Shown piece after piece: positions 3,590-59,830 of a DNA stretch of 64,000 nucleotides (positions within the stretch are counted from its first letter, which is position 1; each line of letters begins with the position of its first letter). The notes beneath the pieces are model-generated. The model searched no databases. It was not told the DNA's origin and was given only the letters and a program-made list of their open reading frames with translations. The DNA is taken from NCBI GenBank assembly GCA_053919585.1, contig CM132795.1; one strand, written 5' to 3'. A program made the translations under genes and the position numbers. This DNA is from Euprymna scolopes (taxonomy: Eukaryota).

Positions 3590-3625
<36 letters not shown>

Positions 3626-13300: not shown

Positions 13301-14817
13301 TAAACACGAATAATAAAATGCTATTTTAATCCAGTGAGACTTATAAAAAAATCTTTGATCTAATAAAAACAAACTAAATTATCAATTAGACTTTATCAAA
13401 AATTGCATGCGAAAGGAATTAAATTTATATATCCAATCGAAAATATGAATCTATGAAAAAGTAAATGGAAAGAGTAATACGAATTTTATTCGTTATTTGA
13501 TTCGTATTCAATCTTAAATGAAGTTTAATCTTTTGTGCATCTGTATTTTCATGGTTTCAGTGATAGTGATTCACTATCTATCCGTGGTAGTAGCAGGTCT
13601 ATAATAGTGGTTTTGCTTCATTGAATTTTGGGTAAGAATGAAAGTATATTTGCAGTGTTAAACCGGATGTGGAATCTGTAACACAACGTGGATGCACAAT
13701 TGGTGCATGCTGATCTTGAGTATAAAAATGTAATGTAGAATGAACGTAAGGATTTTCCAATTTACAGATGGGAGTCGTAATTTAGCTATCCAAAATCTCG
13801 GCAAATTTTTTGGATAGGGAGAAATTCGAGGGCTAGTAAATTCTTTTGATTGTGATGATGCTGCTAACGCATACTGATGGTTATTAGTATGGTTCCAGTA
13901 CTTTCTTTATATAAAATGAATGACATTAAAAATACCACTTTAAGATATACAATTAGTCGCTTCTCCAAAGTTCAAAACTTTTTCCTATGTTGTACTGTTA
14001 TAAACAGGCGTAATATTTAAAAATAAATCACTCGTACTGTAGCTAAGATAAAATCTTCAATTTGAGTTCTTGCACTAGGTTTCATTTTTCATGTCCTTGA
14101 CCTGTGGTGGCAGGTCAGGATGTCATTTATGTATCGCATGAAGCTAGTAGACTAATAGACGACCAGATAGGTTCCAGATGTATAAGGGGAAAACTGAGAG
14201 GGAGTTGGGCGGGTTTACCAACATTTGAATTTTTGTACTTGGTGCCGTCAGGAAAGTAATTTGCAGAAAGAACCTATAAAATATTTCTATGAAATGTTAC
14301 TATTAAAAGCATACTAGAAACCTGCGCTGCGAAAAGTTTGAGACCATGTGCGAGTTCTGTTCATTAGCAAAATTGTGACTTTATGCCATTTTAAACAGAT
14401 CTGTAAAACTACTCTAGTGTTGCACAGCTAACAGTATTAATACATCAACACTCAGAACAAATTCTTTTAAATATTTCATCTGATAGTTCCCAAAAGATAC
14501 CTCTGTTTTTTTTTTGGGGGGGGGGGTATTTCAAATTCATTTAATTTTATCTTAAAATGTTCTACCTTATTGCTGTTGGTACTTTGCTTGATTAGCAAGC
14601 AACTATGTATGAAATTCTCAATTTGTTCTTAATCATGATCGTAGGTTCTAAGGGCTTCAAAGTCAAATTAAAATGTATTTGTGCATCTGACAATTTGATG
14701 GGTAAGAAAGTTGATGCCGTATTGGCCAGATTAGACTAAGCAATATTCGCCCAAAATGTATGAAAAATGGCTAAAAACTTTTAGCAGAATAAAGAAATTA
14801 ATGTAGGGATTTAAGTT

Positions 14818-14854
<37 letters not shown>

Positions 14855-14889
14855 GTCAGTTTGATAGTTCTACCCTCAATCTTTAAAGG

Positions 14890-15790
14890 ATTTGAAATGG
14901 CTGTCACCTGTACCTGAACGGTGACTGTCAAAAGTATAATACATTGGATTTCTAACTGGCTTGTAAACTTCAGAATATAGTGCCCAACTAGTGGGATGCT
15001 GTGCATAAATGAATTAGATCTTAATTTTTAAACTTAGATAATTGTCAAAGACTTTTGGTAAGTTCTGTAGAACCAGAAAACTAGATTGTATATATATCTA
15101 CCTGCTGATGGTGCTCCTATATATGATCAGTATAATTTTACAGGTGGACTACGCTGTTGCAAGAGTCCCATAAACTAGCTTTATGGGTTCAATCATACAG
15201 CCAGTATTTTGCCTGAAGGTGTGCAATAGTTCAGTCCAGTAGGGATGACAATACTGAATGTCCTCTTTCCAGGACATTGGGTATCCGTGTGCCATAGCTA
15301 ATATTAGAGGACACAGCTTCCTGGGTGGATATATCCTCTAACTGTAATGGTTTACTAAGTTGACTGACATTAATTTTCCTCAGCCTGCATTGTGTTTTTC
15401 ATTACCTCTTGGGCGTCTTAATTTTATATTCTCTGCAATATTAGTCTGGGGCTAATGTTTGTGCCTAACGGTGTAGCTGTTTTCTAGACTGTTAGTACCT
15501 GGGTCCAGACTGATCGCTTAATATATCTAGCATCTTTCGAGTGACCGCTTATGTATGGTAGCAGGAAGATGTATCATCAGGTCTATTCAGAAAACGGTGG
15601 GTGTCAGTTCACCCGGTTACTCAATACATGCCAGATGCTGTCACTCCATTTGTGAATTCGTATTTGTGCAGAGCTACAATATGCTCCTGTTATCACTTAC
15701 AAATATCTGTTGTATCAAATGACGTCTTTTAGTTCTAGATTTTACTCTACAATTGTACAGGTCCAGGATAGTAAGAAATACCATTTGAAA
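14890..15790 (-). mobile_element. Decayed RTE-like LINE RT fragment; copy 1 at ~3650-4330 lacks ~227 bp
   Basis: Minus-strand degenerate motifs HPGSCV (~YLGSxI) and LVYG (~LLYGxExW) occur in the expected order. Confidence 0.4.
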
Positions 15791-18786
15791 GTTTTCGATT
15801 TCCTCGACTGATTTTTATTCTGTTTAAATTAATCCTGTAGTGTGTATCTTAGTCTTTTAATTTTGTCACTGTTCACTACATCCCTTCCAATCAAATTTAA
15901 ATGGTTTAGTTTTTGAAATGCTCCATTTATTTCCCCTAAATTTAACATTTCCAATAAAATTAAATTTTTTGGGTATTTGTGCTGGTCGTTTACATGCTTG
16001 CTACTCATGAAAGTAAATTGGACCCCCTATTGTCACCATTCGGGGCAACAGAACCAGAGCCGTTCCTCCTAGCCCGTTCTTTTTGGGACGATCTTTCTGA
16101 CTGCCTGTGATGTAGCAGCTGGCCCGATCTTAGTACATCATCCGTCTTTCCTCCTTTGGACAGAGGTAGTGCTGGAGAAAGGCTTCGATCTGCTTGGTTA
16201 CCACCTCATCACGACCCTGGCGGGTAAAACTGCCGCAGCTCTATGGGAGCCTGATCCAAGAGGGAATCGAGCTCTCCGGCAATCATATCTACTTGATCTT
16301 CCACCTTTTCCCATTAAGTATCTTACAACCGAACCTTGTGAGACTCGCACTTCAACCGCCTCCTCTGCATGAGTTCTCTAACACTCGCCAGAGACTCCTG
16401 CTTGGAGAGATGAATTAGGTGCCCCTTCTATACCTCGCCAGAGCAGCCAAGAATCAGATCGCAGTGTACATCTCTGCGTTTGTTAGGTACCGACATTTCA
16501 TTTCAGATGCATTAGATTGCAATAGCACATTGTCCTTGGAGATCCATGTCAGACTGGGACGGCCCCAGCAACCCTGTCCTGGTTGGCTCTTCCGGATGTC
16601 TGCCTCTGGTGTTGGGATAACCAACGACCGGATGCAAACTCGTGAACAAAAGGAGACCTGAAAAAGGAACGCCCCCCCTCACCAATATCTGACCCAGTTG
16701 ATCGGTCACCGAGGATAGCAGACGGACCAGATTGTTATTCTTCTATAATTCTTCCAAAATAGTTTTATTTGTAGAGCAATTAAGACTGATTGCTTCAGTG
16801 CTGACATAAGATAAAAATTTTCTACAAATTCGCTTTGTCAGCCGGACCCCATATTTGTAGACTGCAATCCAATAGGCCGTTGGTGATCCATGTTCTGTAG
16901 GAATGGATCGTTGTGGCTAAGCCATTCTACTTCATTTGACTAGGTTGGAGAGGCTCGATTCAGTAAATTGACTGGTCATGTCATGCCTTAGTATCAATAA
17001 CTTCACTCACAATTGTATCATTTAATCTTTTTACTTTAAGAAAAACAGATACTAAGTAGTGGCTAAAGGTTAACTACGTAAGGAAATATTACGAATGCCA
17101 AAATGTAATTTTTTTTTCTAGTGTTTTCTCTAGAAGGTATTTTCCAATATAAACGCTTCCTCTCGGAATTTTAATCTAGGGACGACAATATTTCCTTTTC
17201 CATTAGTTTCCTTTTGAGAGTAATTCATCTTAAACATTAGATTTTGGCCTCTACTGATCCTAAAAGGTTAGTAAAAGATAAATTGCTGATAATTTAATTT
17301 CGCGTACGTATTTTCACTTGGGACTTTTCTGATAAGGATTTATTTAAATTGGAGTATTGCTTGAAAATAAACATGCAATGTTAAATTCTGTTTCCAGATG
17401 ATATTTGCTCATAATTCCTTTGACACTTTCGAATTCGTATTTAAGTAGGCCGTCAATGGGTAAGATTTTTCCAGATCCGTCTCTTGAACCCCATACTGCA
17501 ATATTTAAGCCAATGAGAATGTATTCCATGTTATCTTTAAAAGGATTCTGGCAAACCTCAAACTTGCTATTCTCTATCCAAATAAGTTGCATGATAACGT
17601 TGTCATCGGATTCTCCAGTTCTATGGACAGTAAATCAGATACACAACACATCACTTCTGCTTTGTTTTGCTTTTAGATTTGTAAAACTTATTTTTAATTT
17701 ACGATTAATAAAGACTTAATTTTTGTCACTTTGTGGTCAAAAAGTATTTTGATTTAATCGGACATAATCTCAATTTCTAGACTATGAATTAGATTAAATG
17801 CAGAAAGTGAGCAAAATACGATTTGCTATTAATTGAAAACTGCTTAGGCACTAAAGGATAAAGCGGTGTATTCATCCAGGTGTTGATTAGTAGTATACCC
17901 CTTTTTATTGCGTTCGGAGAGTATTTTCCCAGCGATAAACAGGATTAGATTCTAATTTGGTTAAATTGACGAGTGATGATCCAAAGATTACAAAACTAAC
18001 AGATTTTTTTAGCATTACTATTACTAGCATTTAGTATCTGAACATAAAATCTGATATATAATAGATCAAAAATACATTTGTCATGTTATTTTCACGTGAT
18101 AATAGCTCACCGAGTCATTCGAACTCTTTACAAGATGTTTATACCGTTTTCATTTTTCAAGCAATCTTCCAAAAGTACGGTGTCTCCATCAGTATTTTTT
18201 TTTTGTGAAGTATTAATATTTTATTTTTTAATACTTGCTATGTACGTACACTAATATATTAACTGTTTATTAAATCGTACAATAACTCATTTGCCGAAGC
18301 AAATGATTTGGTTTTAGATAACTACCAGACATTTCATTACTGAATTTTTTAAACAATTTTAACATGTGATCAGGTTAATATTTTAAATTCAGCTTTAATC
18401 ACTTTTCTACAGTGACAGGATTCAATTAATCGAATTAGGACAGAAAAATTCATTTTTTAATATCAAGTCATTTGTTGCAAGCTCTACATTCAAAATCAAT
18501 TTAAGTCTGTTTCATATCTTTAGTTATACTCCTCCTGACTAATGCTGCGATTTTTCATTTCTTTTGACCAATTTTACTTGTCTTTTGTTTATTATAAATC
18601 TGACTCTCTGCCGTATAGTAACATATATTTTATTTGTTTGAAAACCTCAATACAAGCGAATTTTAAACTAGCAGGACCTGTGGAAATTTCAGGAACTCAT
18701 AATTGATGTTGGCATTCTTTAGATGTTCAGTGTAAATGGAGACTCTCTGATATTGTATCTTTTTTAAAACTGCAAAAGTATTTAAG

Positions 18787-19100
18787 CTAGGACAAACGTC
18801 CGGCGTAGCCCGGTCGTAAAGTATGCTTAAATATTTTAATTCTTGCAGATTTCGTATATATTAATGTTATATCGATTTTGATAAAGTTGCGATTTAAAAA
18901 ATAAGTCATACATATTAGCTTGAATCGAATCCGAAATAAAAACTTAGGAAATGCACCCATATATGCACAAACTTGAGTTCCTTCGGCCATAACCAAAACT
19001 TATGAAGAATTCTTAGTAAAATTATGACTAGGGAAGTACACAATTGAACAACCCGGATGTAAGCGTAACACTATAACACGTTATCGTATTAAGCTATAGA
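18787..19100 (-). mobile_element. Non-autonomous Helitron-like element, copy 2
   Basis: Duplicate of 7348-7661 with the same termini. Confidence 0.55.
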
Positions 19101-20438
19101 TTAGCCTTTTCAGATTCAAAGGTTTTTTTGAGTCCTTAATATTTTTCTAAAATCTAAACGGTCGTAGTAAATATTTGGAAACCCCTAGATAAAGTATTCA
19201 TTTTCATTTTGTTTGGATAGTAAACTTTTGGTCAATAAAAATACTGTATTGATTCGTAGATATTATATTACTTGGTAATCTTTTTTTACATTTAAGTAAT
19301 AGTGAATCTTGTGCATAATATCACTAAGTATTTGAAATGAGTTTACAATTCCTTTAGAATGACTACTTTTATTAATCGAAATGTCGGTTTATGAAGTCTT
19401 AGAAAAAATAAACATTCAAGATTTAGATTTTTTTTTTCGTGTTCTAATACTTTATGGGTATTACCATTTGCAAAGTATCGTACTGAAAAATATATTCAGT
19501 TCGGCTGTACTGTGAATGATCTCTAGCTACATATGGTGACGTCTCAATTTGTGAGGGGAAACTGGTGTACGTTATCCTTTCGTTGTCATTACTCAGATTC
19601 ACTCCAAACTTTGGTCACATGGGCTAAATAGAATTGCTATTTGTAAAAAGAGCAGGATTCGGGAAAGGCTATAATGTTAGGATAAAGTACTCCAGAACCT
19701 GTTCAATTTTGCGTTTTTCCTATGTTGCCACATTTATTCTCTTGGAAGTCTATTCCAAGATAGAGATCCAGATTGGGAAACAGCTCTTCAGTTCTGTAAA
19801 TTTTAAAGTTTCATGCACTGCTGAGTGCTGACCTGTTTCGCTTGCATGAATGAATCAGTTAAATGGGCTGGTATTTTGAGAGAAAAAAAAGTTCATGGAT
19901 AGAATTCGTCACTGTATATTTCCTAACAATTCAACTTCCAGCACACGTCTGTCGTCCTCACCTCTACCAACAGGTGTTTTAAAAACTGCATTTCATTTGC
20001 ACATGTGGGCGGTGTGATCTCGTAATTCCAAGAGACCACACTTTATAAAGCCACGACCGCTCTCTTCTCAGAGCTTACTTTGGTTATATTCAACTCTACA
20101 AATAGGTCGCGAAGTATGATTGAGTCCGTAGACAAAGATGAGATGATTGTCATCACTCGAAGTAAAATAAAGTGTGACCTATTTTGTTAAAGTTTTAGGT
20201 TGTCATAAAACTGGTAAATATTTAACAAATACCAATTAGTCAACTGGAGAAATTCTGTTTATGATCGATTCGATTTTGGGATAGTTCATTTTAGCTGGGT
20301 AAAGTTCAACATCCGATAACCACGACGACCACATAGGCATAAGATGTGCAAGCATAGATATGCAACATACTCTTCTAGTTTGAATAGAAGTTTATCTGGT
20401 CCAATCATCCGTTACTACAAGGTATACGTGTTAATATG

Positions 20439-21772
20439 CAGTCAAGCCCGAAATGGGTTGTATCCTTAAAATTATTTGCTGAAGTGAACTGTAATTTCAG
20501 GTGTACCTCTGTCTAGAAAACGAATTCTATACTAGAAATTATTTCAAACAAAATATTGTACTGCTTATGAGACACAAATGTTCAAATTTATTCATATCCA
20601 GTATTTAATAGTCAATAACATTGCCTTAATTTTCGTCTGCAAACTATTGAAATATTTGTCAAGGTTCTTACACACTTCAACACTTTGACTTTTTAACATA
20701 GTTCTCTAATCTTGCTAATTTTTAAATTTGCTCTTCTATTTTGTTTTTAACCATATTTTTGGGGATGAGACTAGAACTTTGACTTGACCAATCGAGGACA
20801 TTTATCTGGTTGTCATTTAACCATTTTTCTCACTATATTGGCAGTATATTTGGGATTGTTATACTGCCGAAGCATCCATTTTGAGCCCAACGCAAGCTTT
20901 TCAGTATCCTTCATGATCTTTACATTTTAAGATGCTGCTTTTATTCCATAAGCTGTTTGAGACACTTTAAAGAAATTCGAAGCATAATTCAAGCATAACC
21001 ATAACCATAACCATAAGGGCTTCGTGGAGTTGGACTTTCACCATACTTCCAAATCTAAGAACCCATATGCCCAAATTCAATTTTTCACCTGTTCATAAAA
21101 TCTTGTTAGTCCATAGCTTTTAGATGTTTTTAGGGAGCTTTTCTGGATCGTCATTGTGCCAATTACATGCGAAGTCTTCTGCAATGTTGAAATATTTCGG
21201 ACTCGGATGCCTTCAACATCCCAAAATGTTATTAGAGGTGATCCTTGGGTTTTTGATTCAATAATCGTGAGATTTCTAGCTCATCTAGGAGACGTTTCGT
21301 TTTCATGTCTAATCGGGTTTTTGTAATGTTTTGTATTGTTGAAACCGGAACATTGAAATAGCTTTATACTCCAGACCTCTTTTAATAAAATGTGGCAATT
21401 CAGTTTGAGATAATCAGTTAATGTACCTTAATTTTCAAAGTGTAGATCCTTCCTTTAAAGACTTTTCGGCAAAATTGAATAAGATTATTTTTCTGAAAAA
21501 TAATGGGATACTTATATTAGAGCAAATAAATGAACAGCAATTAGAATAATGGCTATGCTCACAGGAGATAAAAACTCAAGTAATCCAGCTTTAAGTAATT
21601 TATGAACATCCCTGATTTCACAAATTGACATAATACTGCTACTGAGTGTTCCCCTAATTTAACAAGTTCTGTATATTCAAAACCATAAACATTTGCGTGA
21701 AGCTCTCCTGAAGCGTTTTAAGAACGGAATGAATTAGATTTTTTCCTGAGGATATAATTTCGGACTTGACTA
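20439..21772 (-). mobile_element. Decayed Tc1-family DNA transposon, copy 2
   Basis: Same TIRs. It retains INVLDWSSQSSSLIPQNM (~VLEWPSQSPDLNPIENL), which is partly deleted in copy 1. Confidence 0.85.
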
Positions 21773-21869
21773 TAATATAAAGTTAAAAGATTCTTCACTA
21801 TTTCAGTAGTGCTGGAATACTTGAGCAGTCAATATCATTAAATTGCTAATCCATAGAAATCGTAGGTAT

Positions 21870-22445
21870 TGGAAGTGTTGGACTTGTTGCCTGCTGCCAT
21901 CTTTTCTCTTGCATGATACTTGAAACGATATGGCAATCTAAATTAAGTTCATACAGGAGTATTGTAGGATTTCTTTTACTCGATAAATGGCCTGCCCAGC
22001 ATATCTTATGTGACATTCAGAATGTTTGCGACCTTATCAGAGAAACACCATAGTTAAGACAAGTCATGTGAAAGAAACTAAGTTTGTCATCGATATGGTG
22101 TCCATGTTTTTTTGCTCCATATAAAATATTTAATACTGACGCTTTGCACACGTTGGTTTTAGTTTCAAGTCTAACCTCACGGCCATCCGCATTAAATGCC
22201 TTCTAAATGCTGCATTACCTTTGCAATTTTATCCAGTATAAGATGTATTGACTTTGCTTCCCATATAAAGGACTTCACATGCTTTAAGTTTTCTTTTCCA
22301 TTTACATGGAAAGTCATATCAGGAAAGCAATGTGCAAGTGGATACTGTTGCACTCTACATATTTGGGTTTTGGCCGATCTAAATTTTAATGCTGTCTGCC
22401 TAAACTCCTTTGTTATTGAAATCTATTAACGAGCGTCCAGACATC
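21870..22445 (-). mobile_element. RTE/BovB-like LINE 3' fragment; truncated copy at ~10420-10835
   Basis: Minus remnants: YMGS (YLGS), AAF.R.L, L.TK.NVCKASVLNILYG, then CWAGHL and LLYEL, in the RTE C-terminal order. Confidence 0.7.
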
Positions 22446-23416
22446 ATGAAATCTAGAAATTAGTAGCAGCAGGTGATGGCAGTTTGGATAAGGACTTGCG
22501 TTGAATTGAAATTAATGCTTGACGAGAATACACCAAACGCATGATTGAGAATCCTTGCAAATCAGGTAAAACGGAGCTATCACTCATCTTTAACTCTGGT
22601 GACATCAAAATGATCAGATATCATTACCAGCCAACTGAAGTTTTCATACCTTCATGAAAGGATATAACATCACAATTTTTTTAAGAATCTTCAAGTTTAC
22701 TGTTAAAAATCTGTTTCTACAAAAGCTATACAGTTCCTGATTCTTTTAATTTCTTTACAACCTACTGCAGTACAAATGCCAACTGTTCCAATGTGAGCAA
22801 AAACCACAAGGAATTCCACAATTTGGTAGAGTATGACCGGAGTCAGTACTTTACTAGTTATAACGATGAAATTCCATGATTATCTCATATCTGTTACCCA
22901 TTTCCTGTGACTTCACCAGACAATGTCCTTTTATACCCCTTACTCTTGAAAAAATGCTAAAGTGAAAACTGAAAACTTTCTGCAATTGCGGTATGGACCA
23001 AATAAGTGCATCAAACAGATGTATTTAACACTGGAAGTGTCTTGACCCACTTAAAATATTTCATTTGCTTACATGAGTCAGGGTAAAAAAAAGGACTACT
23101 GCCACACTGTAGTCTTAAGGCCTATATGAAAGCGTTTGGAGTGTTAATTCATTTCACACATTTCAGTAGCGTTTGTAGCTTAAGATGTAGTCTTAAAGAT
23201 TTCTGAAATCTCTTTATACATGATTCTTTGAAAAGGTTCAAGCATCTGGTTTATCAGATTTCACTTCGTTATCAAACTAAACTTGGGTATTTCTGAACAG
23301 GAAAGCCAGGAACAAAAAAATTCATGGACGGTTTCATGTTAAACCTGCCATATTTTTGCAATATTACCAGTAATGCAGTTCAATGGCAAGATTAGGGTTC
23401 CTATTTGTACCAATGT

Positions 23417-23592
23417 TTTTGTCCTGGCTGTCATTTTGTCCTGGCTGTCATTTTGTCCTGGCTGTCATTTTGTCCTGGCTGTCATTTTGTCCTGGCTGTC
23501 ATTTTGTCCTGGCTGTCATTTTGTCCTGGCTGTCATTTTGTCCTGGCTGTCATTTTGTCCTGGCTGTCATTTTGTCCTGGCTGTCATTTTGT
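23417..23592. repeat. Minisatellite, 10 perfect copies of 17-bp GTCCTGGCTGTCATTTT
   Basis: Units start at 23421, 23438 ... 23574 with no mismatches and no spacers. Confidence 0.99.
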
Positions 23593-25385
23593 ATGGACAC
23601 CTTTGCAAAAGGTGTTTTCCTTTGCCTACTCCTTGATGACCAAAAACCCCATAGTATGAATTATGATCAACCTTAGCACAAGCATTGAGGTCATTCATGT
23701 GAATGTTGTACAATCTGTCGCACACAGGTACAATCTTTCTCAGGTCGGCATAAAATTATTTTTACTTGGCGTTGGAGTATAATGGCTCACTAATGATACC
23801 TTTCACGATCAAGAGGCTCCATCTAATACTATCAGATCTCTTCAGGAAGTTTTGTTTTAATTTTAAGTAATATAGAACCGAAAAGATCCTCCTCTTGATT
23901 GACGTGATTCTTCACTTTTCTTAGAACAGTAACCTCTTTACTTGATTAACGCTTTGCTGGTTATTCAATGCTGAAATGTCAGTTGTGATTTATTGTTCTA
24001 AAGTAAATAATGCAGTTTTCCTTTTTGATCTCTCAGCACCGTTCAGGAGAATACTAACATTGACAAATAAAGCACTCAATTCAGGTTCATGCAGTGTTTG
24101 AACTACAAATAGAGTAGTGGTCTACAAAGTCAAATATGAACAAGCATTTTAGAACTTTTACCGACTCTTGAAGTGAAAGCCGATCTATCTAAAGACCTAC
24201 ATTGTGATCCACACATACACTTAACATTTTTGCACATAAAATATCACCAAGCGATTCCCCTACAGGGATCCAACTAAATGCGGCAAGTAGTACTTTTCAC
24301 CTGCCTCTGTCGCTCTATCGTTGGACATTTTGGAGTTTATATGGTATTGCATAAGTAAATATTCAGTTTCTCGGAACTAAAACAATTTAAGTGGTAAAAG
24401 GCTTGTCTGAGACTAAACCTGTTGGAGTCTATCCTGAAAGAATCGTCCAAAAATACCGAGAATGAATTACAGCAGTCCCCAGTTTTTTTTTTTTTTTTTT
24501 TTTTTTTTTTAGTGACCTACCACAATTGTACGATTTGTGTACGTCTCCTCTACCCTCGGGAGACGTATTATCCGAGTCAGTTTCTCGATATGGAATTTCT
24601 GAAGTGTCATCTTTGCAGAATCCTACATGTAGAGGTAATTGTTTGACCCTTAGAACCATTAATTTCTGAAAGCTCTAACAAGAAAAACTAAGGATTCCAT
24701 GAAACGAGGTGAAAAATCCTATCTATATCAAGCAGGCGGATTACTAGTCAACCGTCATTAGTGTTTTCTAAATATATCTAAAATATCTATAAATAGAATA
24801 TTGAGCAACTGATACATTTAATCCATTATAATTCCATGGAAATAAATTGAATGTCTCAAAATGAAAGGGAATTTCAGGTTCACGTTGCTCCTATCTATAA
24901 ATAGGAAATACAATTAAACGTCTTTTTAAAACTGCATAATTTAAAACAAGTTTAATTTTACTCAATATTTTGACACTTTGACTTAAATGAGTTACTTAGT
25001 TCCAAATTATTCTATAAAGTTAAAAGGTTTTTGGTTAAAGATAGTGAAACACTCTGACCTTATATATTTTTACAACCGATGTGAGGTCGGTGAGCCGAGA
25101 AATTTTCAAATCTTTAAACTTGTGTATCACTTTCAATTTAACGGTATGAGAATTTAACTTTTTATAGAACGTTTTAAAAAATAGTCAATTTAAACTGACA
25201 TTGTATTCTACATTTTGTAAAGATGACGATTGTAAAAATATTTCGGTATAGAATTTGATTTTTTTTAGTCTTGTTTATCCATTCGATAATCACTTGAAAA
25301 ATGTATAAAAGTTCTTAACAGGTTTTGTCCTGGTATATAGAAAAAATTTCGGCCGTTTTAAATGTTCAAATATCGTGTTTATATT

Positions 25386-44365: not shown

Positions 44366-44657
44366 ATATTATATTATATACAGTATCGGCCATAATATAA
44401 GGAACGAAAAAAAACAATTCATGTATATTTAAAAAAATAGTGCTGGGTCCATAACCTGTTAAGTGTTAAGACTGTTGAACGAAGATGGTGGTGAAGGAGC
44501 AGTGCACTACGATCCTGTGTAATTGCCAGTAACAAAAATGGCAGCGACCTGATCGGTTTTAAAACTCGACAATTTTTATAGTAACTTTGGAAGCTTTTCA
44601 TTGATTGCTCACCATGACTTGTGGTTATAAAAACGATCGTCGAAATCATTGGTGTCA

Positions 44658-45505
44658 TACCCCCATTTTGCAGGAGTGCCCCTCCTTTAGGGGAGCCTGC
44701 GGGTATCCCACTTTCCAGGCCTTGTGCCAAATAATGCTGATGTGGGCAGCATTTAAATAAATACCCCCATTAGTTCTTCTGATGTGGATGTCTCCTAGCG
44801 GCTTCGGCTGCAGGGAGACAGGGTAGTACACGTCAAGGATTCGTCACTTGACACTCAGCCCAACAGGTGAGGTGCCGGCCCCCGGCCCAGCACCTGTTGG
44901 ACTGAGGTACGCCGCCTGGGTAATACCTAGGAGGTCCACCCTCCCAGGCCCTGCCACCGGGCTTTCTAGTGGGGCAAGTTAATTGCTTGTCGCCTGAGCC
45001 GCCCCTACCGGGGAATGCCGACGGGGGCCCAGGCAACTTTTGATGAGGCAAGAGTGCCTCTCCTTTATGGGAGCTTGCCTATTTCCACCTTCCGGCCTTG
45101 TGCCATATTTTGGTGTGGTGAACACCAAATAAATAGCTACCCCCATCAGTTCGTCTAATGGGATGTCTCCTAGCGGCTTCGGCTGCAGAGAGAGGGTAGT
45201 AGTACTTGTCAAGGATTCGTCACTTGACACTCAACCCAACAGGTGAGGTGCCAGGAACCGGAGCAGCACCTGTTGGACTGAGGTACACCGCCTGGGTAAT
45301 ACCTGGGAGGGTGGACCTCCTAGGCCTTGCCACTGGGCTTTCCGGTGGAGTAAATTCATAGTTTACTGCCTGAGGCGCCCCTACCGGGGAAATCCGACGG
45401 GGTTACTCAGGCAATTTTTCAATGGTAGGATTGCCCCTCTTTTAGGGGAGCCTGCTGGATCCCCACTTTCCGGCCTTGTGGCAAATAAATAACTACCCCC
45501 ATCAG
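44658..45505 (+). repeat. GC-rich head-to-tail array (~2.25 copies, period 376-378 nt) of a highly structured non-coding unit
   Basis: GGCCTTGTG at 44718, 45094 and 45472. TACCCCCAT at 44658, 44762, 45138 and 45494. Multiple hairpins show compensatory changes between copies. Confidence 0.95.
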
Positions 45506-48059
45506 GAGTCAAAAACATTTAACCTTCTAGAGCTAGCTAAGCATTGGATTGAAGCGTAATATTTAAGTAGCATAGAAATGAATTTCATTTATCACTGACA
45601 CCCAAGGTCAGATGGAACCTGACAGTAAATAGGACGTGCATGTACGTAATAACCTCGGTATTGCCACCGGATGTATTTTAAAGTCATAAACAAGATAATT
45701 TTCCTGGATTTTTTTTTTTTTTAGCTTAATTTGAAAGCTGATTACAGAAAAGCATATTGCTTTTCTGTATAAGGACTGTTATGGTTTATATCATAAATCC
45801 TTATAAATTCATAAAGATCAATTTTTCTGCGGCTATTTAATGTTTGGGGAAATGGGTTCTAATTTAAGGATGGTCATTAGAATCAGTTTTCGTGCAAAAA
45901 CTCTTAAAAATCTTTTCCCCATAACTTAAATGTGAGCGGCTTCTGTAACTTCAGGCGCTTTAGAGCTCTTCTATATCGCATTTAAATTTCCGATGAATCC
46001 GAAATGCGTGTAACTCGAAGTAAATTAAATTAGTGGAGGAAAAATTTTTTTACTTTTAACACTTCATGAAACATTTTACATTTTTAGTTTTTGTTTTAAC
46101 ACTTACGAAAAACTATAAATGGTGTCATTTTAAAATGTCTTCTACAAGTTTTATTGCAGAATTGTCATGATGCATGAGTTTTAAAACGTTATCAGACTTA
46201 TTTTAAACATCTGTAAACTTCAGCTGGATAAATGAAATTGTCAAATGTATGTTTTAACACTCGTGGTTATCAAAAGAATTTAATTTCATTTTATGCCTAG
46301 TGACTTCCGTTCCATATTTAGTTAACCGAATCTTAACTTGAAGAACTGAAGTTTTTGGACTTGACCATATTTTAGATGCTCCTTCCTTCAATATCTTGGA
46401 TTTTTCTAATGATAGAACGATTCTGAAATTTTGGTAATTGTCTTAAGAATTCCTTGCATGAAATAGCAGATGCTGTTTACATGTTCTATACGTAATACTG
46501 TAGTACGGCTAAGCTGGATATAATCGTCCTATATTTCCGGAATCGTAACTGTAGGATATTTTAACCTTAATTGAATTATATGGGTAAACTATTTGGATTC
46601 AAAATGAAAGGCTTATGAAATAAGTTTGAAAGCTGAATTACAACGCAATATTGTGAAAATAAACAAGTGCTTGCTTGTTTAAAATGAATATTTTGGAGTT
46701 CGACTCCTTCGTCATAATTTTATTTTCCTTTTTCCTCGCCATGATAAATTAACTTAGTAAGTACACGGCTATATTCTGCTGTTATTGAATTTAGTTTAAA
46801 CCTTTCTTATACCGAGGCATTTTAAGCATATTACGGACAGCACCAAAACTAAACAGATTCTTTTGTATAGAAAATTTGGTACAAGTTTCTTTCAAAATGT
46901 TTAATAGCATGAATACAATCCTTATTACTAGTTGTATGAATTCGTGTTTAGAGGCAGGATAGTTTCCTGCTACTATTGCAGATTACATTTTTACAGAACC
47001 AGCAAATTACATGACGAATCCTCCTTTTGAATGATTAAGAGCAGGATAAAATTTGCCACCTTGCTTTATATTATGTTACTAGAATATCACATTTTTTACA
47101 TAAAACTCCATATGGAGCAGTATTAATTTTCGGCCGAACAAGTTCTATTTGCCATGTCAAAGAATTTCCTAGTTTTGTTACTAATGAAAACTGTCTAAAC
47201 TTGTCGGTCTGTCCGACCTCTTTGGGTAATAAACCCTAGGAACTCGCTAATTCTGGGGATGCTTAATTTCTTGGGACAAATTTCTATTATCTTACAGAAA
47301 ATAGTCCTGTGGAGATTGAGACAAGTAATACATGAGTGGGGGGGGTAATGGAGTTAATAAAAATGGAATATTAGTAAAAACTTTGCATATAAAGATGCCA
47401 TTCAAGATACCTTTCAATCCACTGATTTTCAAAAGGGGAACCGTCAGCAAATAGCATTTAAATAGAAAAAACAAATATATCGTGGGAAAGAAACACTATC
47501 ACCAATATAACCAAAAAAGACGTCATATCTGCATGTAATAGAACAAAAACTAATTGACAAAAGTAGGCATTGTTTTTGTTTTTTTTTTAGTTTTTTTTTT
47601 TTGTCTATAGCTCTTTAAATAATTCTAACTTCTGGGAGATCTTTTTTCTTTCAGAATATAAAATGGGTGTTTGGATAGGGTATTGTGTATAATGCAAAAG
47701 CAACTATCTGAATATTTATTGTCTAGCAAATGCTGCCCAATAGCTCACTTGTGAATCGGCGAGTGCCCGTATGTGTCTTGTAAATAGATGTACTCGTTAA
47801 TCTTTAAAACCTGTGACTTACAGAAACATGAATAATTTGTCCCTCCGCTTCCTAAGTGATAAAAAATTCTAACCATATAGTCAGCTTCACACTTGAATTA
47901 AAATTCGTGGATTACTAAACTATTTAATGTGAGAAACCTCTTCTGCAAGGCTTGAGAAGCAGATCCATTACTAACTACAGGGAGGTCGACCACGTAACGA
48001 AACAAAACCTCATTCTATCAAATGTTTTACTGATAACCAAAAGAAGTTTCAAGGGATAC

Positions 48060-49965: not shown

Positions 49966-50039
49966 AGATCTGATTAGCCCTAAAAACTCGTTCAGACCTA
50001 ACTTAAGGTGTATACATAGTTTTGTAGTCTCTTTAAGAC

Positions 50040-53000
50040 AACAGCCCTCATCTTGGGCCTCATTTTTTTTTTTTTTTTTTTTTTTTTTGTCTCAGCCTAC
50101 TGCCCAGAGATTCTCGCCCGTTTCTGAAGTAGGTCCTCTCTATCCCCCTCCCTCCTGATCACAGAAATGGCAATGGGGTGGTGATCGCCATTGCTGGGGC
50201 CCTTCTCCGAAGGGGAATAATGCATGCCTCTTCTTTGCTTAAGCTCTCGTCTGCGAACTGGGGATTGAAGAATACCGCTTCTGCTGGGATGTCTCATTGG
50301 TCTCTGACTTGGAATCACTTGCTTCCGTTGTTTACAGGTAGCCCCGATTGTGTTGTCTGCCGTAAGTCCTTAATGTGACGGGGCACACCGACACACTGCT
50401 GGCTTGCTGATCACTTCAGTGATGCGTCCAAGTCCATACAGAGTTGTACATTTGCCACATGGGTTCTTGATCCAGACATCCCCTTTTTCCAGCTTCCCTC
50501 CAGTTACCTCGGGTACTGGGTTCGTTTCTATGCGTTTCACCCTAACGTGATACCTGTACAATGTGTCAGCCGGCACTGTAGAGGATGATACAGTATCCTT
50601 TGTGGTCATGTTGTATAAATAAGCTGCTTCAGACACAGCACAGCCTATTCTGGCGGCGATAGTTTTGACAGGCCTGTGGTTCTGCTCAATAATTCCATTC
50701 CTGCTCAGTACGCAGGCATATCAGAACCGCAGATGTACTCCCCAGCCATCGGCGAACTTACTGAATTGTTCATTGTGAAAGCGGTGCTGTTGTGAGTATC
50801 TCCATTAGGGTGCGGGGCTACGTTCATGGAAGATGCTGTTTAGCTGATGGATGACTGTTGCCGTATCTTTGCGGCGGAGCGGCCGCCATTTAGCAAACCT
50901 AGATGGGCCGCAGTCAATGAGCAATAGGTAATCCTCACTTGTGATGAGTAACATCTATCGCCAGCCGGCTTCAGTGGCTCTTTACATCTAGTTTTCCTTT
51001 TTCCCAGTCAACGGATGCCGGCTCGATGGATTGGCAAGCCACGAAGCTCTCAACGCCTCTTCTAACGTCTGCTTTTTGTACTTCAGGGTCATCTCATCCA
51101 GTGGTGACCTTAGACGCTATGAACGCCACCGCAACACTAAGCCAACCACCCACAAGGTGTCCAATTTTCTGCACCAAGAAAATACGTTTCTTCACAGGGC
51201 ATGTCTGGGACTTCATTTCCCCGTTTCTAATGCAGGACGTCTTCTCCCTGGACCTGTAAACTGAGCACCTGTGCGCCATCCTGTAGTCTCTCTGGCTCTT
51301 TACTGAGAAGTCCGAAATTGCAGAGAGGCTCTTCTACATGCGTCGCAGATACAACCCTTCATTCACATACACGTCATCAATATATGCAGATGTTGCCTGC
51401 CTTATGCGCTCATCCTGAGTCAGAATGGTGTCAATAATTGTTTGCATAATTGATGGCGCCACGTTGAGTCCGAACCCCATACGAGTTGAGCAGTATCTCT
51501 TCCCCTTAACCAGAACTGTCTGATAAGGCCATAGTGACTGGTGTACATGCACTTGAAGGTGCGCCTTCTGAAGATCAAGCATGCACACATTAGACCCTGC
51601 TTGTCACCATTCCCATAATTTATCAGCACACGTCTGCGCAGGCCGTAAAGGGGTCCGCGTGTTTGTATAAATCTCTATAATCAAGCACCGGCCTCACTTT
51701 TTGTTTGGTTGGCTGGACGACCAGTGGGTTTAAACACTTCAGAGACCCCAATTCCTTCTCAGGATAAGGAACCAGCCATCCATTGTCGATCCAGATCTGT
51801 AGTTCCCTATAATACTCTACGCAAGCTCCGGGGGAAATCTTGTACTCTGGCACTCTATTAAACAAATTCTCTGGTGGTTTCGCTGACCACTTGCAAGGCA
51901 CAGTCCAGGACTTCGTGCACTGGTCAAACTCCGCACAAAAATCAGGTTTATCTAGAGTGAGTGCTGCGCAAACGGTCTTCACATTGGGAGAATGTCACAT
52001 TCCTGGCTCCATCTAAGACTCCACCTAGCTGCACAATTACGTCCATTCCTAAGAGTAAATCATACTCGAGTTCTCCTTGTCCATAATCAGAGCTTGCACG
52101 TCTACTTCAGACCCACTACCGATGCTTATGTAGATGACACCTTAAGAGGACAACGAGCTCCCACCTACAGTTAGCACCGGAGTTCTAGTCATTTTCCAAG
52201 TGTCATAATGTTCTTTGCACACAAGTATCTGGGTGCAACCCGTATCCACAAGCGCGTGGCACTTGTGCCCATTAACGTGTATGCTCACTGAAGGTAGCGC
52301 CTTGTTTGATGACTATCTGGGGAAAAGACTGGTGCTGTAAGTTCCTCCCTGTAGCCCATTTCCGGACAGGCGCGAGCCAGGTGTCTTTGGTTTTTACATC
52401 TGTGACACCGTGGTCCATTAGGCTTCTGGGTCGTTGACCGCGACAAAAGGCAATCACGGACCCAGTGGTTTGGGCCCCTGCATCAGAAGCAGTTAACACT
52501 TCTGGTGTTCTTGCTAGCTGCAGTGGTGTAGGTGCACTTGCGGCCTCTCAAAGTTGGACCCCGGCAACGACCTCATCTCTGGTATCCATCAGGATGGCAT
52601 GAGCCCTCTCAAGCAGCTCTTTCAATGACGGCTTGTCCATTCGGGTTGATACTCGCAAAATTCCTTTTGCATGGCATGGCAATCTATTCATGAAGGCTTT
52701 TTATCCAACACTCTTGTGGCATTTTACCTACCAGGCATGCTAGCCACTGCAAATCCGTCAAACTCCTCCAGTCTCCCCTGGCCAAAGGCAGTGGGTGGTT
52801 AACTGTTCCAATGCTGTAAACGTATCCCATAATCCTTTACAAGAGCACGCTTGATTTCCTCGAGGTCACTCTATTGGTCCTCAAAGAGTTGCCGATGCGT
52901 CTCATGAGCCGCACTCTGCAGCGGCAGTACTCGCTCCAACTTGGTTTCCTCGCACAGCTCGCCTGTTAACTCTACATCCTCTAGCCATTCTACTATTGGA

Positions 53001-53972: not shown

Positions 53973-55463
53973 TAGTAGCGTCCAAAAGTTAAGGAACGAT
54001 CGATCTTTTTTTTTTTTTTTTTTTTTTTTATGGCTTCTAACTTAATCTATGAAAAAAAATTTTTGAATTTTCTAATGTTCAATAATGGTAAAAGAAAAAA
54101 TATTTTGATTTTAATACATATTAGTTTTTTACATATAAATTTAAATTACAGGCGTCCAAAAGTTAAGGAACGAGGCAAATTCATTAAATAAGGAATACTT
54201 TCAGTATTTAGTGAAAAGCCTCTTGTTTTCAATCACACTATGGCATGTTTTGCTGCAAAACAGAACCAATCGTTCACATGTTATAGGTGAAATAATATTC
54301 CAGGATGTTTTTATACATTCCCATAAATCAAGATTTTGGGGTTTTCTGTGATCTTATCACCAATAATTTTTCAAACATTTTCAATTGGATTCGGGTCTGG
54401 GCTCTGAGTTGGCCAATCCATAACGCAAATATTGGATCTATTTAGCTCTTCTAAAACTATTTTTGCTTTATGGCACGGTGCGTTGTCTTGCATAAAGATA
54501 TCAGAATTAGAAAGATTAGGTACCACATGTTCTCTAATCAATTCTCTGTACATTCGGGCATTAACTTTTCCATGAATTCTCACAAGGGGGCCAGTTCCTT
54601 TTGAAGATATCATGCCCATACCATTATACTGCCGGCTCCAAATTTTACTGTACTTTTAACGCACTTAGGGGACAGTCTTTCTCTTTTTTTTCTTTTTTTT
54701 TTCTTCTGACATGTGGTCTTTTGTCTGATCCGAAAAGATTAAATTTAGATTCATCAGTAAAATTAACCTTTTCCCATTTTTTTTTCTTCCCAAAACAAAT
54801 GTTTTTCGGCGAATAACAATCTGGCCTTTTTATTCTTAATAGAAATTGAAGGCTTTGAGCATGGACTTCTTGAAAATAATCCAACTTCGTTTAATCTTCG
54901 TGAGATCGTTTGTCGGGAAATCTTGTGTCCAGTTTCGGATGTAAAATCCCGGGGTATTGAAGCCGCAGTTTTAAAGCGATCAGAACGAGATGATCGAGTG
55001 ATTTTTCTATTCTCCCTTTTAGCTGTTATTCGTGGTCGGCTCGATTTTTTTCTTTTCAGTCAATGGTAAACCTTTTTCTATTTTCAATAATCCGAAAAAC
55101 AACGCTTTTAGACCTTTTCAATATTTTAGCAATCTCCCCTATGGACTTTTTTTCATTATAATGGTCACAAATAGGCTGGTTTTCTTGTACAGATAGCCTT
55201 TTTCGAATATTCGGAGTCGACATTTTGTTAATAAAATTGTTAACGTTTGTATTTTCTGCGTTCCTAAACTTTTGGACGCCTGTAGTTAATTAAATTTATA
55301 TGTAAAAAAACCCAATATGTATTAAAATCAAAAATTTAAAAAAAATTTCTTTAACTATTATTAAACGTTGGAAAATTCACCAATTTTTTTTTTTCTTTTT
55401 CATAAAGTTAGAAGCCATTAAAAAAAAAATGATCGCTCGTTCCTTAACTTTTGGACGCTACTG
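53973..55463 (-). mobile_element. Tc1-family transposon with IR/DR termini, inserted in a (TA)n tract
   Basis: Outer ends TAGTAGCGTCCAAAAGTTAAGGAACG and CGTTCCTTAACTTTTGGACGCTACTG. Inner direct repeats at 54149-54172 and 55259-55282. TIRs are ~200 bp. Confidence 0.95.
54201..55223 (-). pseudogene. DD34E Tc1 transposase, frameshifted and with stops
   Basis: MSTPNIRKRLS...EIAKILKRSKSVVFRIIEK* (HTH), SRPR, WEKVNFTDESKFNLFGSD, FMQDNAPCH-(34 aa)-E in WPTQSPDPNPIE, and C-terminal TKY*. Confidence 0.93.
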
Positions 55464-57893: not shown

Positions 57894-57930
<37 letters not shown>

Positions 57931-57984: not shown

Positions 57985-59830
57985 TACCATTCATGCCAGA
58001 CATCTTCATTCGTGGTGGACTGTCACACGGTTTTTCTTGCAGGATTTCGTCTTGCCAGCAAAGAAACTCTTTGTCGTGTCACATCTTGGAATACATTCCG
58101 TCTACTGCCACAGTGTTCTTGGAGAGTACATCAGTTACAGTACCTCTTCCCCATCGTGCTGTAAAACAAGGATTGCCTGTTCCACTTTACTGTTGCAACT
58201 AATGGCTCTTGATTCGTACATAAAAACGACTGTGGCACTGACATTTCATCCTGACCAGACTTTTGTGCTATATACCAAAATACCGCCTCTTGGGGCGAAA
58301 TTTGACTTGTTGCCACAGCTTTTATAGTACGACTAACCTGAGTGGCTGCTGTTGCCCGGGTGTTTGGAGGTGTTGAGTGCAAAAATGGTAGTAGGCAAAG
58401 GAGGAAAAGAACGTAGTCCATTGCAGAGCCGGAAGTGGCGAAGGTTTCGATTAAGGCTAGTCAATCGAAAAGAGGGGATGACTTTCGAAAATATTTGAAA
58501 AAAAAGCGACCCCTTCTTGTAGAAAAGTGCCCAGTTGAGGATGAAGGAATGTTTTTAGCCAATTCTTCGATATTTGTCTGAAGGGTCGAGCTTCAAAATG
58601 ATACTGATCTCGTGAAAATCCGTCGGCTGTCGAAAGTTTTAGGCAGACATACATAGTACTTAAATCCGATTTGATTGTGCCTCTCTGTAATCCCATTACC
58701 ACTCAGTCAGTACGCAGCTCGAAAATATTGCCTAATGATCAACTTTGCACATAAAAACTTCTGAGCAAAAGGACAGGCCATTATCAACTAATACTCCTAC
58801 CGGTCGCCTTTCCAGACACATCTCAACAATTTTCTTAACTTCTGCCATTCCCATTCTCATTATTTGGCATGTTGCTAACCGCATAGGGCCACAATTATAG
58901 TCAGATAATGTCAATGGCCAGTCGCCTCCAATTTTCTGCCACATGTAATTCCCGTTTTCATGTTCAGCTAGCGCAGGGTCAATGGATTGACATTCCCTAC
59001 ATTGCTCCACCACTTCCCGGGCAACTTCCATCGTGATGTGTGGATTAATCTTTTTTGCTAAGTATAAAGTTGGTTCTTTCCTGAAGTGATGCATCTTATG
59101 CAGGTCACCAGCTGTTCCACTGTACAGCACAATGGAGCCACAGCCTTTTCCCTTAGCCAAGCATTCTTCACTCTGGTCAATCCATCTGCTTTATTCTGTG
59201 TTGTAACCAAGGTAATAGTTACCTTCAATCCAAATTCTTGGATTAGGTCTCAAAATGCTCCAAGTTGACGCTTTATAATCATTTCTGCTGCCCCTTTTGT
59301 CTTGATCCGCTTATCCAGACACCTCCGATCTAATACATGTTACTGTTAACGAGACTGTAACGTCTATCTGTAGCTCCCATTTTAAAGCCAGATTGATGCC
59401 CTTCCTCATAGCATCAAGATCTGCAAAATTGATATGGGCAATATCGTTTTTATTCTTTTTTTTTTCGTAACCAAGCAGCATCTTCAGCAGTTGAATTTCC
59501 TATTTTTAATAATACCCTAATGTTAGGTTGCTAGCATCACTCCATATTCTTACTCCCGGCTCCTTTCTATGCCATTCCCCCTTCACCGATTTCACGTTTT
59601 TCACTTCTACAATGACTTGTATCATGAATAGCACTCCTCGGTCAATCCCCTCCTATTGATCTGTACCCGTCTGCCTCTTAAAGCTGCATGCTGTTTGCAA
59701 CCATCCGGTGATGGAGTAATGGCTGACCAACTTTCCACATATTGAGAAAAGCTCTCTTGATCAGCCCCCCCACCGCTTCAGGAATTTCGTCTTATTCAAA
59801 TATCAACTTTCTTGCCTTATTCTGCTGTAA
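57985..59830 (-). mobile_element. Second Gypsy-type pol fragment (RT end, RNase H, integrase) from a different subfamily
   Basis: RNase H WSDASN, EDAAWLRK, HINFADLDAMRKGINLALKW; integrase HKMHHF...CRECQSIDPA, VLVDNG, FRAAY*LSGNGITERH | RTIKAVA..ISPQEAVFWY, WGRGTVTDV. Confidence 0.88.

What the first reader, a model, noticed from the sequence alone, without database searches (positions are those of the whole stretch)
44658..45505. Tandem ~377-nt structured-RNA monomer with structure-preserving divergence: retrozyme/viroid-like element without a recognisable ribozyme
Seen: a GC-rich non-coding array of ~2.25 head-to-tail units in AT-rich DNA. Each unit folds into many stems on the + strand. (1) TGTCTCC/GGAGACA capped by GCGGC-TTCG-GCTGC (44789-44820). 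(2) GTCAAG-GA-TTCG-TC-A-CTTGAC (44832-44852). (3) CTCAG..CCAACAGGTG/CACCTGTTGG..CTGAG (44854-44906). (4) TACCC/GGGTA closing a multiloop. (5) GCCTGAG/CTCAGGC. Differences between copies keep the pairing: GGCAAGT-TAATT-GCTTGTC (44973-44991) vs AGTAAAT-TCATA-GTTTACT (45349-45367), both 7-bp stems with 5-nt loops; AATGCTG/CAGCATT (44733-44753) vs TTTGGTGT/ACACCAAA (45109-45129); GCAGG/CCTGC vs AGGCAAG/CTTGCCT vs GGTAGG/CCTGCT. The UUCG loops and most G.U pairs point to the + strand as the RNA. Established: animal retrozymes are tandem arrays of structured monomers of a few hundred nt that make circular RNAs via self-cleaving ribozymes, usually hammerheads. Inference: this is a similar RNA-propagated element, selected on fold. 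Since no CUGANGA/GAAA hammerhead, HDV or twister core is evident, it may use an uncharacterised ribozyme or processing signal.
Basis: partly seen in the sequence, partly recalled or inferred. Interest (0 to 1): 0.9.

Follow-up and report, generated by a model that had tools for sequence, protein, structure and literature searches.

The report
Structured tandem repeat inside a retroposon
The 376-base, hairpin-rich tandem repeat is real and its copies differ in ways that keep the hairpins paired, but it belongs to a very abundant mobile-DNA family of this mollusc and shows no ribozyme or circular-RNA signal, so it is most likely an ordinary non-coding retroposon.

Summary
There are 2.25 head-to-tail units of 376 nt (44658-45505), 55% G+C in 31% G+C DNA. 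Units 1 and 2 are 82% identical and fold far better than shuffles. Their 70 substitutions break half as many pairs as random placement (16 vs 30, P about 2e-4). Nine double compensatory changes sit in three hairpins.

The claim that G.U pairs mark the + strand fails (7 vs 10).

No ribozyme is detectable: Rfam gives nothing at E<=10, there is no hammerhead core on either strand, and no tRNA or 5S relation.

Reads show a very high-copy dispersed family: over 10,000 distinct contigs in one DNA run, shared by at least three species. The array lies inside a larger repeat (about 44458-45523). That repeat has a ragged 5' side and a sharp 3' end, and also exists without the array. A 9-13-nt motif (TACCCCCAT..) occurs once per unit and at the array's left edge, and is the branch point between forms.

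PolyA RNA reads are sparse (about 55 per million), come from both strands, and show no defined ends.

Best reading: a non-autonomous retroposon whose structured body multiplies in tandem by reverse-transcriptase template switching. A ribozyme-less retrozyme is not excluded but has no support. The scan noted a probable sister array (383 nt) elsewhere in this genome.

The parts
44458..44657 (+). Left arm ('H-left') of the larger dispersed repeat that carries the array. G+C is 39%.
   Evidence: Family depth rises stepwise from 687 (44400-44446) to about 50,000 (44588-44634) in DNA contigs. About 70 contigs in X1 and about 110 in X18 join this arm through the X motif directly to the 3' tail with no array.
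44658..44667 (+). Left-edge copy of motif X (TACCCCCAT+T), directly followed by the start of unit 1.
   Evidence: TACCCCCAT occurs only 4 times in the 64-kb window, all in this element. Joints 44660-44667 to 45496-45504 show the array-less form.
44668..45044 (+). Unit 1 (377 nt).
   Evidence: MFE -177 kcal/mol, z -5.7.
45045..45420 (+). Unit 2 (376 nt), 81.6% identical to unit 1.
   Evidence: MFE -158 kcal/mol, z -4.3.
45421..45505 (+). Partial unit 3. It covers the first ~105 nt of the unit minus a 22-nt hairpin, and ends in motif X.
   Evidence: Alignment A1.
44762..44773 (+). Internal motif X (TACCCCCAT T/C AG). Further copies lie at 45138-45149 and 45494-45505. It is invariant between units while the 15 nt after it are hypervariable.
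   Evidence: Family depth collapses to about 1,500-2,200 at 44768-44783, between about 108,000 (44760-44767) and about 199,000 (44792-44799). In other copies X is followed by the rest of the unit, by the 3' tail, or (here) by a unit start.
44786..44965 (+). Conserved core of three hairpins, including GCGGC-TTCG-GCTGC and the 53-nt hairpin 44854-44906. The unit-2 equivalent is 45161-45341.
   Evidence: Nearly invariant between units. Its 31-mers are held at share 0.73 by DNA and RNA runs of organism A, 0.67 by organism B and 0.40 by organism C.
44668..44702 (+). Covarying hairpin 1. The stem is TTGCAGG/CCTGCGG in unit 1, AGGCAAG/CTTGCCT at 45046-45080, and TGGTAGG/CCTGCTG at 45423-45457.
   Evidence: 3 double compensatory pairs between units 1 and 2.
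44733..44753 (+). Covarying hairpin 2. It corresponds to 45109-45129 in unit 2 and is deleted in unit 3.
   Evidence: 3 double compensatory pairs. The family majority form, TTTGCTG..CAGCAAA, is a third paired variant (loose ends).
44967..44996 (+). Covarying hairpin 3, corresponding to 45343-45372 in unit 2.
   Evidence: 3 double and 3 single-sided pair-keeping changes. In reads, 45354 A>G and 45362 T>C change together in about 97-99% of depth, which is an A-T to G-C swap.
44926..44948 (+). 23-nt hairpin that is the exact reverse complement of its unit-2 counterpart at 45302-45324.
   Evidence: 100% identity on the minus strand over 23 nt. Inverted repeat I2. The family majority has the unit-1 orientation (loose end at 45316).
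45415..45419 (+). T5 run at the end of unit 2 (T4 at 45038-45041 at the end of unit 1). It is followed by a short variable A-rich linker in other copies.
   Evidence: Letters between units in other copies are AAAA, ATAA, AAAG, ACAA, GAAAA or TACA (table 5c).
45506..45523 (+). 3' tail of the carrier repeat (GAGTCAAAAACATTT..). The family ends sharply here.
   Evidence: Depth falls to 0 from 45528. Loose-end consensus sequences agree through ..GTCAAAAACATTTT(AAC) and then diverge.

Best explanation
The array is the internally repeated, highly structured body of a very high-copy, non-coding, non-autonomous retroposon family of this mollusc. Shown: the family is dispersed and heterogeneous. The carrier repeat has a ragged 5' side and a sharp 3' end without poly(A). 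It exists with and without the array. A 9-13-nt motif X, shared by the carrier and every unit, is where the forms branch. Unit-to-unit junctions carry a few variable A-rich letters. Adjacent units are 18% diverged yet keep their pairing. Inferred: the element RNA (probably the + strand) is copied by a reverse transcriptase supplied in trans, Penelope-like or another tail-less non-LTR type. That enzyme switches template at the shared X motif and jumps from the 5' end of one unit RNA to the 3' end of another. This builds head-to-tail arrays from RNAs of different subfamilies. The hairpins are kept because the RNA fold is needed for recognition, stability or priming. Selection therefore acts among replicating lineages, not on this dead copy. 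No self-cleaving ribozyme is involved.
For: Copy number and heterogeneity: 10,118 contigs were laid in one DNA run, with identity classes 1203/2809/3980/2126. The family is shared by organisms A, B and C, with a trace in D. 5'-ragged and 3'-sharp profile: depth rises from 687 to 50,000 across 44400-44634 and falls to 0 after 45527. Array-less form: joints 44660-44667 to 45496-45504, and loose ends at 44667 reading ..AGTAGTCAAAAACATTTT in about 70 (X1) and about 110 (X18) contigs. Other entry phase: the left arm plus X is joined to the downstream part of the unit in joints 44663-44667 to 44789-44790. Junction letters are variable (table 5c). Phased at X, the array reads as one 5'-truncated copy followed by two full copies that end exactly at the tail. 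That is the arrangement described for Penelope-like elements, and their non-autonomous derivatives often give multicopy head-to-tail insertions, including in clades without hammerheads (PMC8557442). Pairing is preserved. No ribozyme, tRNA or 5S relation was found.
Against: No reverse-transcriptase partner was identified and no repeat catalogue (Repbase/Dfam) could be searched. There is no clear target-site duplication: TAACCT at 44452 and 45520 is weak, because the family consensus tail already ends in ..TTTTAAC. The strand of the RNA is not settled. Only one locus could be read as sequence; the family picture comes from summary tables of short contigs that break at branch points. Contig depth sums are poor measures of copy number. 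The hairpin inversion shows that at least part of the pair-keeping change can arise by template switching at the DNA level (PMC8794818).
Confidence: 0.5

Rival explanations
1. A DNA-level tandem repeat carried inside a DNA transposon or MITE-like element, as in the repeat-bearing elements known from bivalves, or a short dispersed satellite. Its palindromes would be created and kept paired by replication template switching, not by selection on an RNA.
For: An exact 23-nt hairpin inversion between units. No G.U strand asymmetry. Both strands fold significantly better than shuffles. RNA reads come from both strands at low level. Template switching can create compensatory changes and loop inversions in one step (PMC8794818).
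Against: No terminal inverted repeats around the carrier. The 3' end is ..CATTTT(AAC), not a Helitron CTRR end. The ragged 5' side and sharp 3' end resemble retroposition. The pair flips in both arms of hairpins 1-3 need changes on both sides, not only copying of one arm. Substitutions are depleted in stems overall.
Confidence: 0.22
2. A retrozyme-like element without a hammerhead. Tandem units would be transcribed, cut to monomers by an undescribed ribozyme or a host RNase (for example at or near motif X), circularised, and reverse-transcribed in rolling-circle fashion.
For: Tandem units are of retrozyme size and hold heterogeneous monomers. The fold is strong and pairing is preserved. Motif X is invariant and flanked by hypervariable sequence, and it acts as the branch point. 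The form 'left arm-X-rest of unit...X-tail' is what priming and finishing at X on a circular template would give. Earlier unverified notes report a genome rich in hammerhead retrozymes and Penelope-like elements.
Against: No known self-cleaving motif at E<=10 and no CUGANGA on either strand. G+C is 55%, against <45-50% for animal retrozymes (PMC7229834). No places where RNA molecules begin or end (table 6). All back-joints are also in DNA. The window's own left junction (X followed by a unit start) does not fit the circular-template form.
Confidence: 0.1
3. A lineage-specific functional structured RNA gene family, with many pseudogene copies, arranged in small clusters.
For: The 180-nt core is conserved across species. 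There is a cUUCGg tetraloop, and T4-5 runs sit at unit ends as a Pol III terminator would.
Against: Thousands of diverged copies exist. No Rfam family matches. No A or B box on the + strand. Expression is not strand-specific in polyA RNA. The array is embedded in another repeat.
Confidence: 0.05

Closest known systems
Non-autonomous derivatives of Penelope-like elements (PMC8557442; bioRxiv 10.64898/2026.07.22.740005)
   Same: No coding capacity. The arrangement is a partial copy followed by full head-to-tail copies. There is no poly(A) tail. The profile is 5'-ragged and 3'-sharp. [quoted passage not shown]
   Different: No similarity to an autonomous element's 3' end could be shown. The reported 30-40-bp 'tail' extension is not seen; there is only a 9-10-nt duplicate of motif X at the left edge. 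The dense G+C-rich hairpin body is not a described feature.
Animal non-LTR retrozymes (PMC7229834)
   Same: Tandem monomers of 150-450 bp, heterogeneous monomers, strongly self-paired RNA, and a genome reported to be rich in such elements.
   Different: No type I hammerhead, which is their defining part. G+C is 55% rather than <45-50%. No evidence of circular RNA.
SINEs, including the cephalopod Ceph-SINEs (PMC5786205)
   Same: Short, non-coding, very high copy, 5'-truncated copies with a sharp 3' end, and T-runs that could terminate Pol III.
   Different: No tRNA, 5S or 7SL head was detected. The 23-nt Ceph-domain motif quoted in PMC5786205 is absent from the window. An internal tandem multiplication of a 376-nt unit is not usual for SINEs.
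Hairpins maintained by replication template switching (PMC8794818)
   Same: An exact inversion of a stem-loop between copies, and clustered pair-keeping changes.
   Different: That process explains single events. It does not explain the overall depletion of substitutions in stems, or the family's amplification.

Membership tests
Animal non-LTR retrozyme | Head-to-tail monomers of about 150-450 bp | tested here: met
   Period 376, 2.25 copies.
Animal non-LTR retrozyme | A type I hammerhead ribozyme in each monomer | tested here: not met
   No Rfam hammerhead at E<=10 over 44367-45900 or 44700-44990. None at gathering score in the whole window. No CUGANGA on either strand.
Animal non-LTR retrozyme | Low G+C (<45-50%) | tested here: not met
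   55.5%, against the range stated in PMC7229834.
Animal non-LTR retrozyme | Expressed as monomer-length linear and circular RNA | tested here: inconclusive
   Only polyA libraries were available as raw reads. They gave about 55 reads per million, on both strands, with no defined ends, and the back-joints are also present in DNA.
Penelope-like non-autonomous element | Partial tandem: a 5'-truncated copy ahead of full copies, with a defined 3' end and no poly(A) | tested here: met
   Phased at motif X, the array is a 105-nt 5'-truncated copy plus two full copies that end at the tail. The family's 3' end is sharp.
Penelope-like non-autonomous element | Sequence similarity to an autonomous element at the 3' end; a 30-40-bp tail extension at one end | not testable with these tools
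   No eukaryotic genome or repeat library can be searched, and there is no reverse-transcriptase ORF in the window near the element. Only a 9-10-nt X duplicate lies at the left edge.
SINE (tRNA, 5S or 7SL head) | A Pol III head derived from a small RNA | tested here: not met
   ARAGORN found 0 genes and there are no A or B boxes on the + strand. 5S was tested against real 5S genes (L002 and others). The collinear chain test gave P 0.03-0.4, the best blastn E-value was 0.32, and my own 5S covariance model scored 7.1 bits, rank 14 in the window. There is no SRP match.
Ceph-SINE superfamily | Conserved Ceph-domain | tested here: not met
   The 23-nt motif quoted in PMC5786205 has 0 matches with up to 3 mismatches. 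This is a limited test, because only that fragment of the domain was available.
Satellite DNA | Long arrays of homogenised monomers | tested here: not met
   Adjacent units are 18% diverged. The family is spread over more than 10,000 distinct short contigs with a broad identity spectrum and many different flanks. Array lengths elsewhere could not be measured.
Helitron/Helentron-borne repeat | 5'-TC...CTRR-3' ends, or short terminal inverted repeats with a subterminal palindrome | tested here: not met
   The family's 3' end reads ..GTCAAAAACATTTT(AAC). No terminal inverted repeats were found.

The most novel reading that the evidence does not exclude
A hammerhead-less relative of retrozymes. 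In this reading a 376-nt highly structured RNA is cut at or near the invariant motif TACCCCCAU(U/C)AG by an undescribed ribozyme or a host nuclease. It would circularise and be copied back into DNA by rolling-circle reverse transcription primed by homology at that motif.
Probability: 0.08. Interest if true: 0.8.

Novelty: new member of a known kind. Interest (0 to 1): 0.3.

Why it matters
If the best reading is right, this is one more lineage-specific non-coding retroposon. It has two points of modest interest. First, its body is a chain of G+C-rich hairpins that keep pairing while their sequence drifts, so it could serve as a natural covariation data set for what a reverse transcriptase recognises. 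Second, a short shared motif acts as a recurrent template-switch point that builds arrays from different subfamilies. The case also shows that pair-keeping differences between neighbouring repeat units point to selection among replicating RNA lineages, or to template-switch mutation, and not necessarily to a ribozyme. Only the minority reading, processing without a known ribozyme, would be of wide interest.

Tried and rejected
1. Known ribozymes and other RNA families. Rfam at gathering score on the whole window, and at E<=10 on 1.5 kb and on 291 nt, gave only chance-level microRNA-like hits on the long hairpin.

2. Hammerhead core and A/B-box regular expressions on both strands found nothing useful.

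3. ARAGORN found no tRNA.

4. 5S rRNA origin. By eye several collinear matches looked persuasive (CCGCCTGGG-AATACC, TAGTACTTG, TCGTCT-AT). I fetched real eukaryotic 5S genes present as contaminants in bacterial assemblies and tested the idea four ways. Local alignment, a collinear chain against dinucleotide shuffles, blastn against the window, and my own covariance model with filters off were none of them better than chance. Rejected.

5. Collecting family copies. Two conserved 20-22-mers had no match in metagenome or viral contigs. A pseudo-ORF protein search aimed at fetching other copies found nothing. No covariance model of the family could therefore be built.

6. The Ceph-SINE motif is absent.

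7. No inverted copy or terminal inverted repeats of the carrier were found.

8. No reverse-transcriptase-like ORF lies upstream.

9. G.U asymmetry as a strand indicator gave no signal.

10. By inspection I tried to fit an HDV-like fold at the unit start and a tRNA-like fold ending in motif X. Neither was conserved between the units, and both were dropped without a formal search.

Full report
**The observation**

The sequence at 44658-45505 is a head-to-tail repeat with a period of 376 nt. Unit 1 is 44668-45044 and unit 2 is 45045-45420. A partial unit 3 at 45421-45505 lacks one 22-nt hairpin. Units 1 and 2 are 81.6% identical. Tandem Repeats Finder did not report the array.

The array has 55.5% G+C and both flanks have about 31%. 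No ORF in it exceeds 83 aa. Each unit folds much better than dinucleotide shuffles. The z-scores are -5.7 and -4.3 on the + strand and -3.9 and -3.1 on the - strand.

**Structure-preserving divergence**

I took the fold of one unit alone and asked how the other unit's 70 substitutions treat it.

- 14% of paired positions and 28% of unpaired positions are substituted.
- 15-16 pairs are broken, against 28-30 when the same substitutions are placed at random (P about 2e-4 or less).
- 5-8 pairs changed on both sides, against about 2 expected.

The double changes lie in three hairpins, three in each: 44668-44702, 44733-44753 and 44967-44996. The core at 44786-44965 hardly varies.

Read tables show the same behaviour in the family. 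Positions 45354 (A>G) and 45362 (T>C), which pair, change together in about 97-99% of depth. The majority form of hairpin 2 is a third, again fully paired, variant.

- The 23-nt hairpin 44926-44948 is the exact reverse complement of 45302-45324. This is one inversion event, not several compensatory changes.
- G.U pairs do not favour the + strand. Internal G.T against A.C is 7 against 10, and G.U pairs used are 12 vs 11 and 10 vs 8. Only the cUUCGg loop and the folding energy of unit 2 lean towards +.

**No known RNA family**

- Rfam gives no match at gathering score in the whole window.
- At E<=10 there are only chance-level microRNA-like hits on the long hairpin.
- Neither strand has a CUGANGA core.
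- ARAGORN finds no tRNA.
- A resemblance to 5S rRNA that I saw by eye did not survive testing against real 5S genes. I used local alignment, a collinear chain against shuffles, blastn against the window, and a 5S covariance model with filters off. The best unit hit in that last search scored 7.1 bits and ranked 14th in the window.

**What public runs show**

The unit belongs to a very abundant, heterogeneous, dispersed family.

- In one DNA run 10,118 contigs lie on the stretch, with identities spread from >99% to <90%.
- The family is present in DNA of three coded species, and the core 31-mers are held at share 0.40-0.73.
- The repeat extends beyond the array. On the left, depth climbs stepwise from about 44450 to 44657. 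On the right, it stops sharply at about 45527.
- Many contigs join the left arm, through the motif TACCCCCAT.., directly to the short tail ..AGTAGTCAAAAACATTTT. This is the same carrier without any array (about 70 contigs in X1 and about 110 in X18).
- Other contigs join the left arm plus the motif to the downstream part of the unit.
- Unit-to-unit junctions in other copies carry a few variable A-rich letters after a T5 run.

The motif, which I call X, occurs exactly four times in the 64-kb window: once in each unit and once at the left edge of the array. It is invariant, while the 15 nt after it are so variable that read alignments break there. X is therefore the point at which the different forms branch.

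**RNA evidence**

Two polyA libraries available as raw reads give about 55 reads per million on the stretch. First mates fall about equally on both strands. Three quarters or more of what was laid (0.74 and 0.81) continues into unrelated sequence, and there are no places where molecules begin or end. The 'goes back 752' joint seen in RNA is equally present in DNA, because it is the ordinary junction between units. This looks like passive transcription of many copies. It says nothing about non-polyadenylated or circular RNA, which I could not examine.

**Interpretation**

A ragged 5' side, a sharp 3' end without poly(A), high copy number and a non-coding body are the marks of a non-autonomous retroposon.

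Phased at X, the array is a 5'-truncated copy followed by two full copies that end exactly at the tail. Partial tandems of this kind are described for Penelope-like elements. Multicopy head-to-tail insertions are described for non-autonomous derivatives of one hammerhead-poor clade (Chlamys) (PMC8557442). A 2026 preprint argues that animal retrozymes themselves derive from such elements (10.64898/2026.07.22.740005).

I therefore propose the following. A reverse transcriptase starts on the tail and switches template at the shared motif X. It then jumps from the 5' end of one unit RNA to the 3' end of the next, adding a few letters at each jump.

This would also explain why neighbouring units differ by 18% and still keep their pairing. 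They would come from different replicating lineages, each selected for the fold, and would not have diverged in place. These steps are inferred from one locus plus summary tables.

**Rivals**

- **DNA-level repeat.** Its palindromes would be kept by replication template switching (PMC8794818). The exact hairpin inversion, the lack of strand asymmetry and the two-strand RNA signal support this. The absence of terminal inverted repeats, the end profile and the stem-wide depletion of substitutions argue against it.
It remains possible. It is helped by the invariant motif X and by forms that look primed and finished at X. It has no positive RNA evidence and fails two defining features of retrozymes: the hammerhead and low G+C (PMC7229834).
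- **Functional RNA gene family.** This is unlikely given thousands of diverged copies embedded in another repeat.

**Limits**

I could not search the rest of this genome or a repeat catalogue, so I cannot say whether the family is already catalogued. No family alignment could be built: two collection scans and a pseudo-protein search found nothing. Contig depth sums are not copy numbers.

An earlier first-reader note (s1-279847) describes a tandem 383-nt structured element 20.7 Mb away on the same piece. It is probably the same family, so the scan has met this before. Other unverified notes call this a 5.9-Gb mollusc genome with tens of thousands of hammerhead retrozymes and Penelope-like elements. 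I used them only as context.

**Verdict**

This is a real and rather elegant structured repeat with genuine pair-keeping variation. It is most likely a new member of a known kind, a non-autonomous retroposon that forms arrays, and not a new class of ribozyme-bearing or viroid-like element.

Noticed in passing
window 1-11200 and 11230-22500: An 11.2-11.5-kb segment is present twice in tandem at 94-100% identity. This is either a recent segmental duplication or an assembly duplication of haplotypes.
   Followed up: no
window 23383-23637: A 17-nt minisatellite (TTTTGTCCTGGCTGTCA) of about 13 copies, mostly identical.
   Followed up: no
window 58735-59160 (-): A 142-aa ORF matches the Pfam integrase zinc-binding domain (E 5.9e-05). 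It is probably a decayed LTR-retrotransposon or retrovirus-like remnant in the G+C-richer stretch at 58-62 kb.
   Followed up: partly
window 44926-44948 vs 45302-45324: One hairpin of the repeat unit is exactly inverted between neighbouring units. This is a clean natural example of a stem-loop inversion by template switching.
   Followed up: partly
window 3590-3630, 14820-14860, 24485-24510, 54005-54030, 57897-57927: Several long T-runs of 20-35 nt. They may be poly(A) tails of retroposons on the minus strand.
   Followed up: no
L001:144-262, L002:62-180, L003:209-321, L004:285-365, L005:1-112: Eukaryote-type 5S rRNA genes sit on short contigs filed under bacterial genomes (Nocardioides, Marinifilum, Photobacterium and two MAGs). 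These are most likely host or sample contamination in those assemblies.
   Followed up: partly
window 50000-53000: A stretch of 48-50% G+C in otherwise 30-37% G+C DNA. Its ORFs (88 and 119 aa) have no Pfam match, and its nature was not examined.
   Followed up: partly
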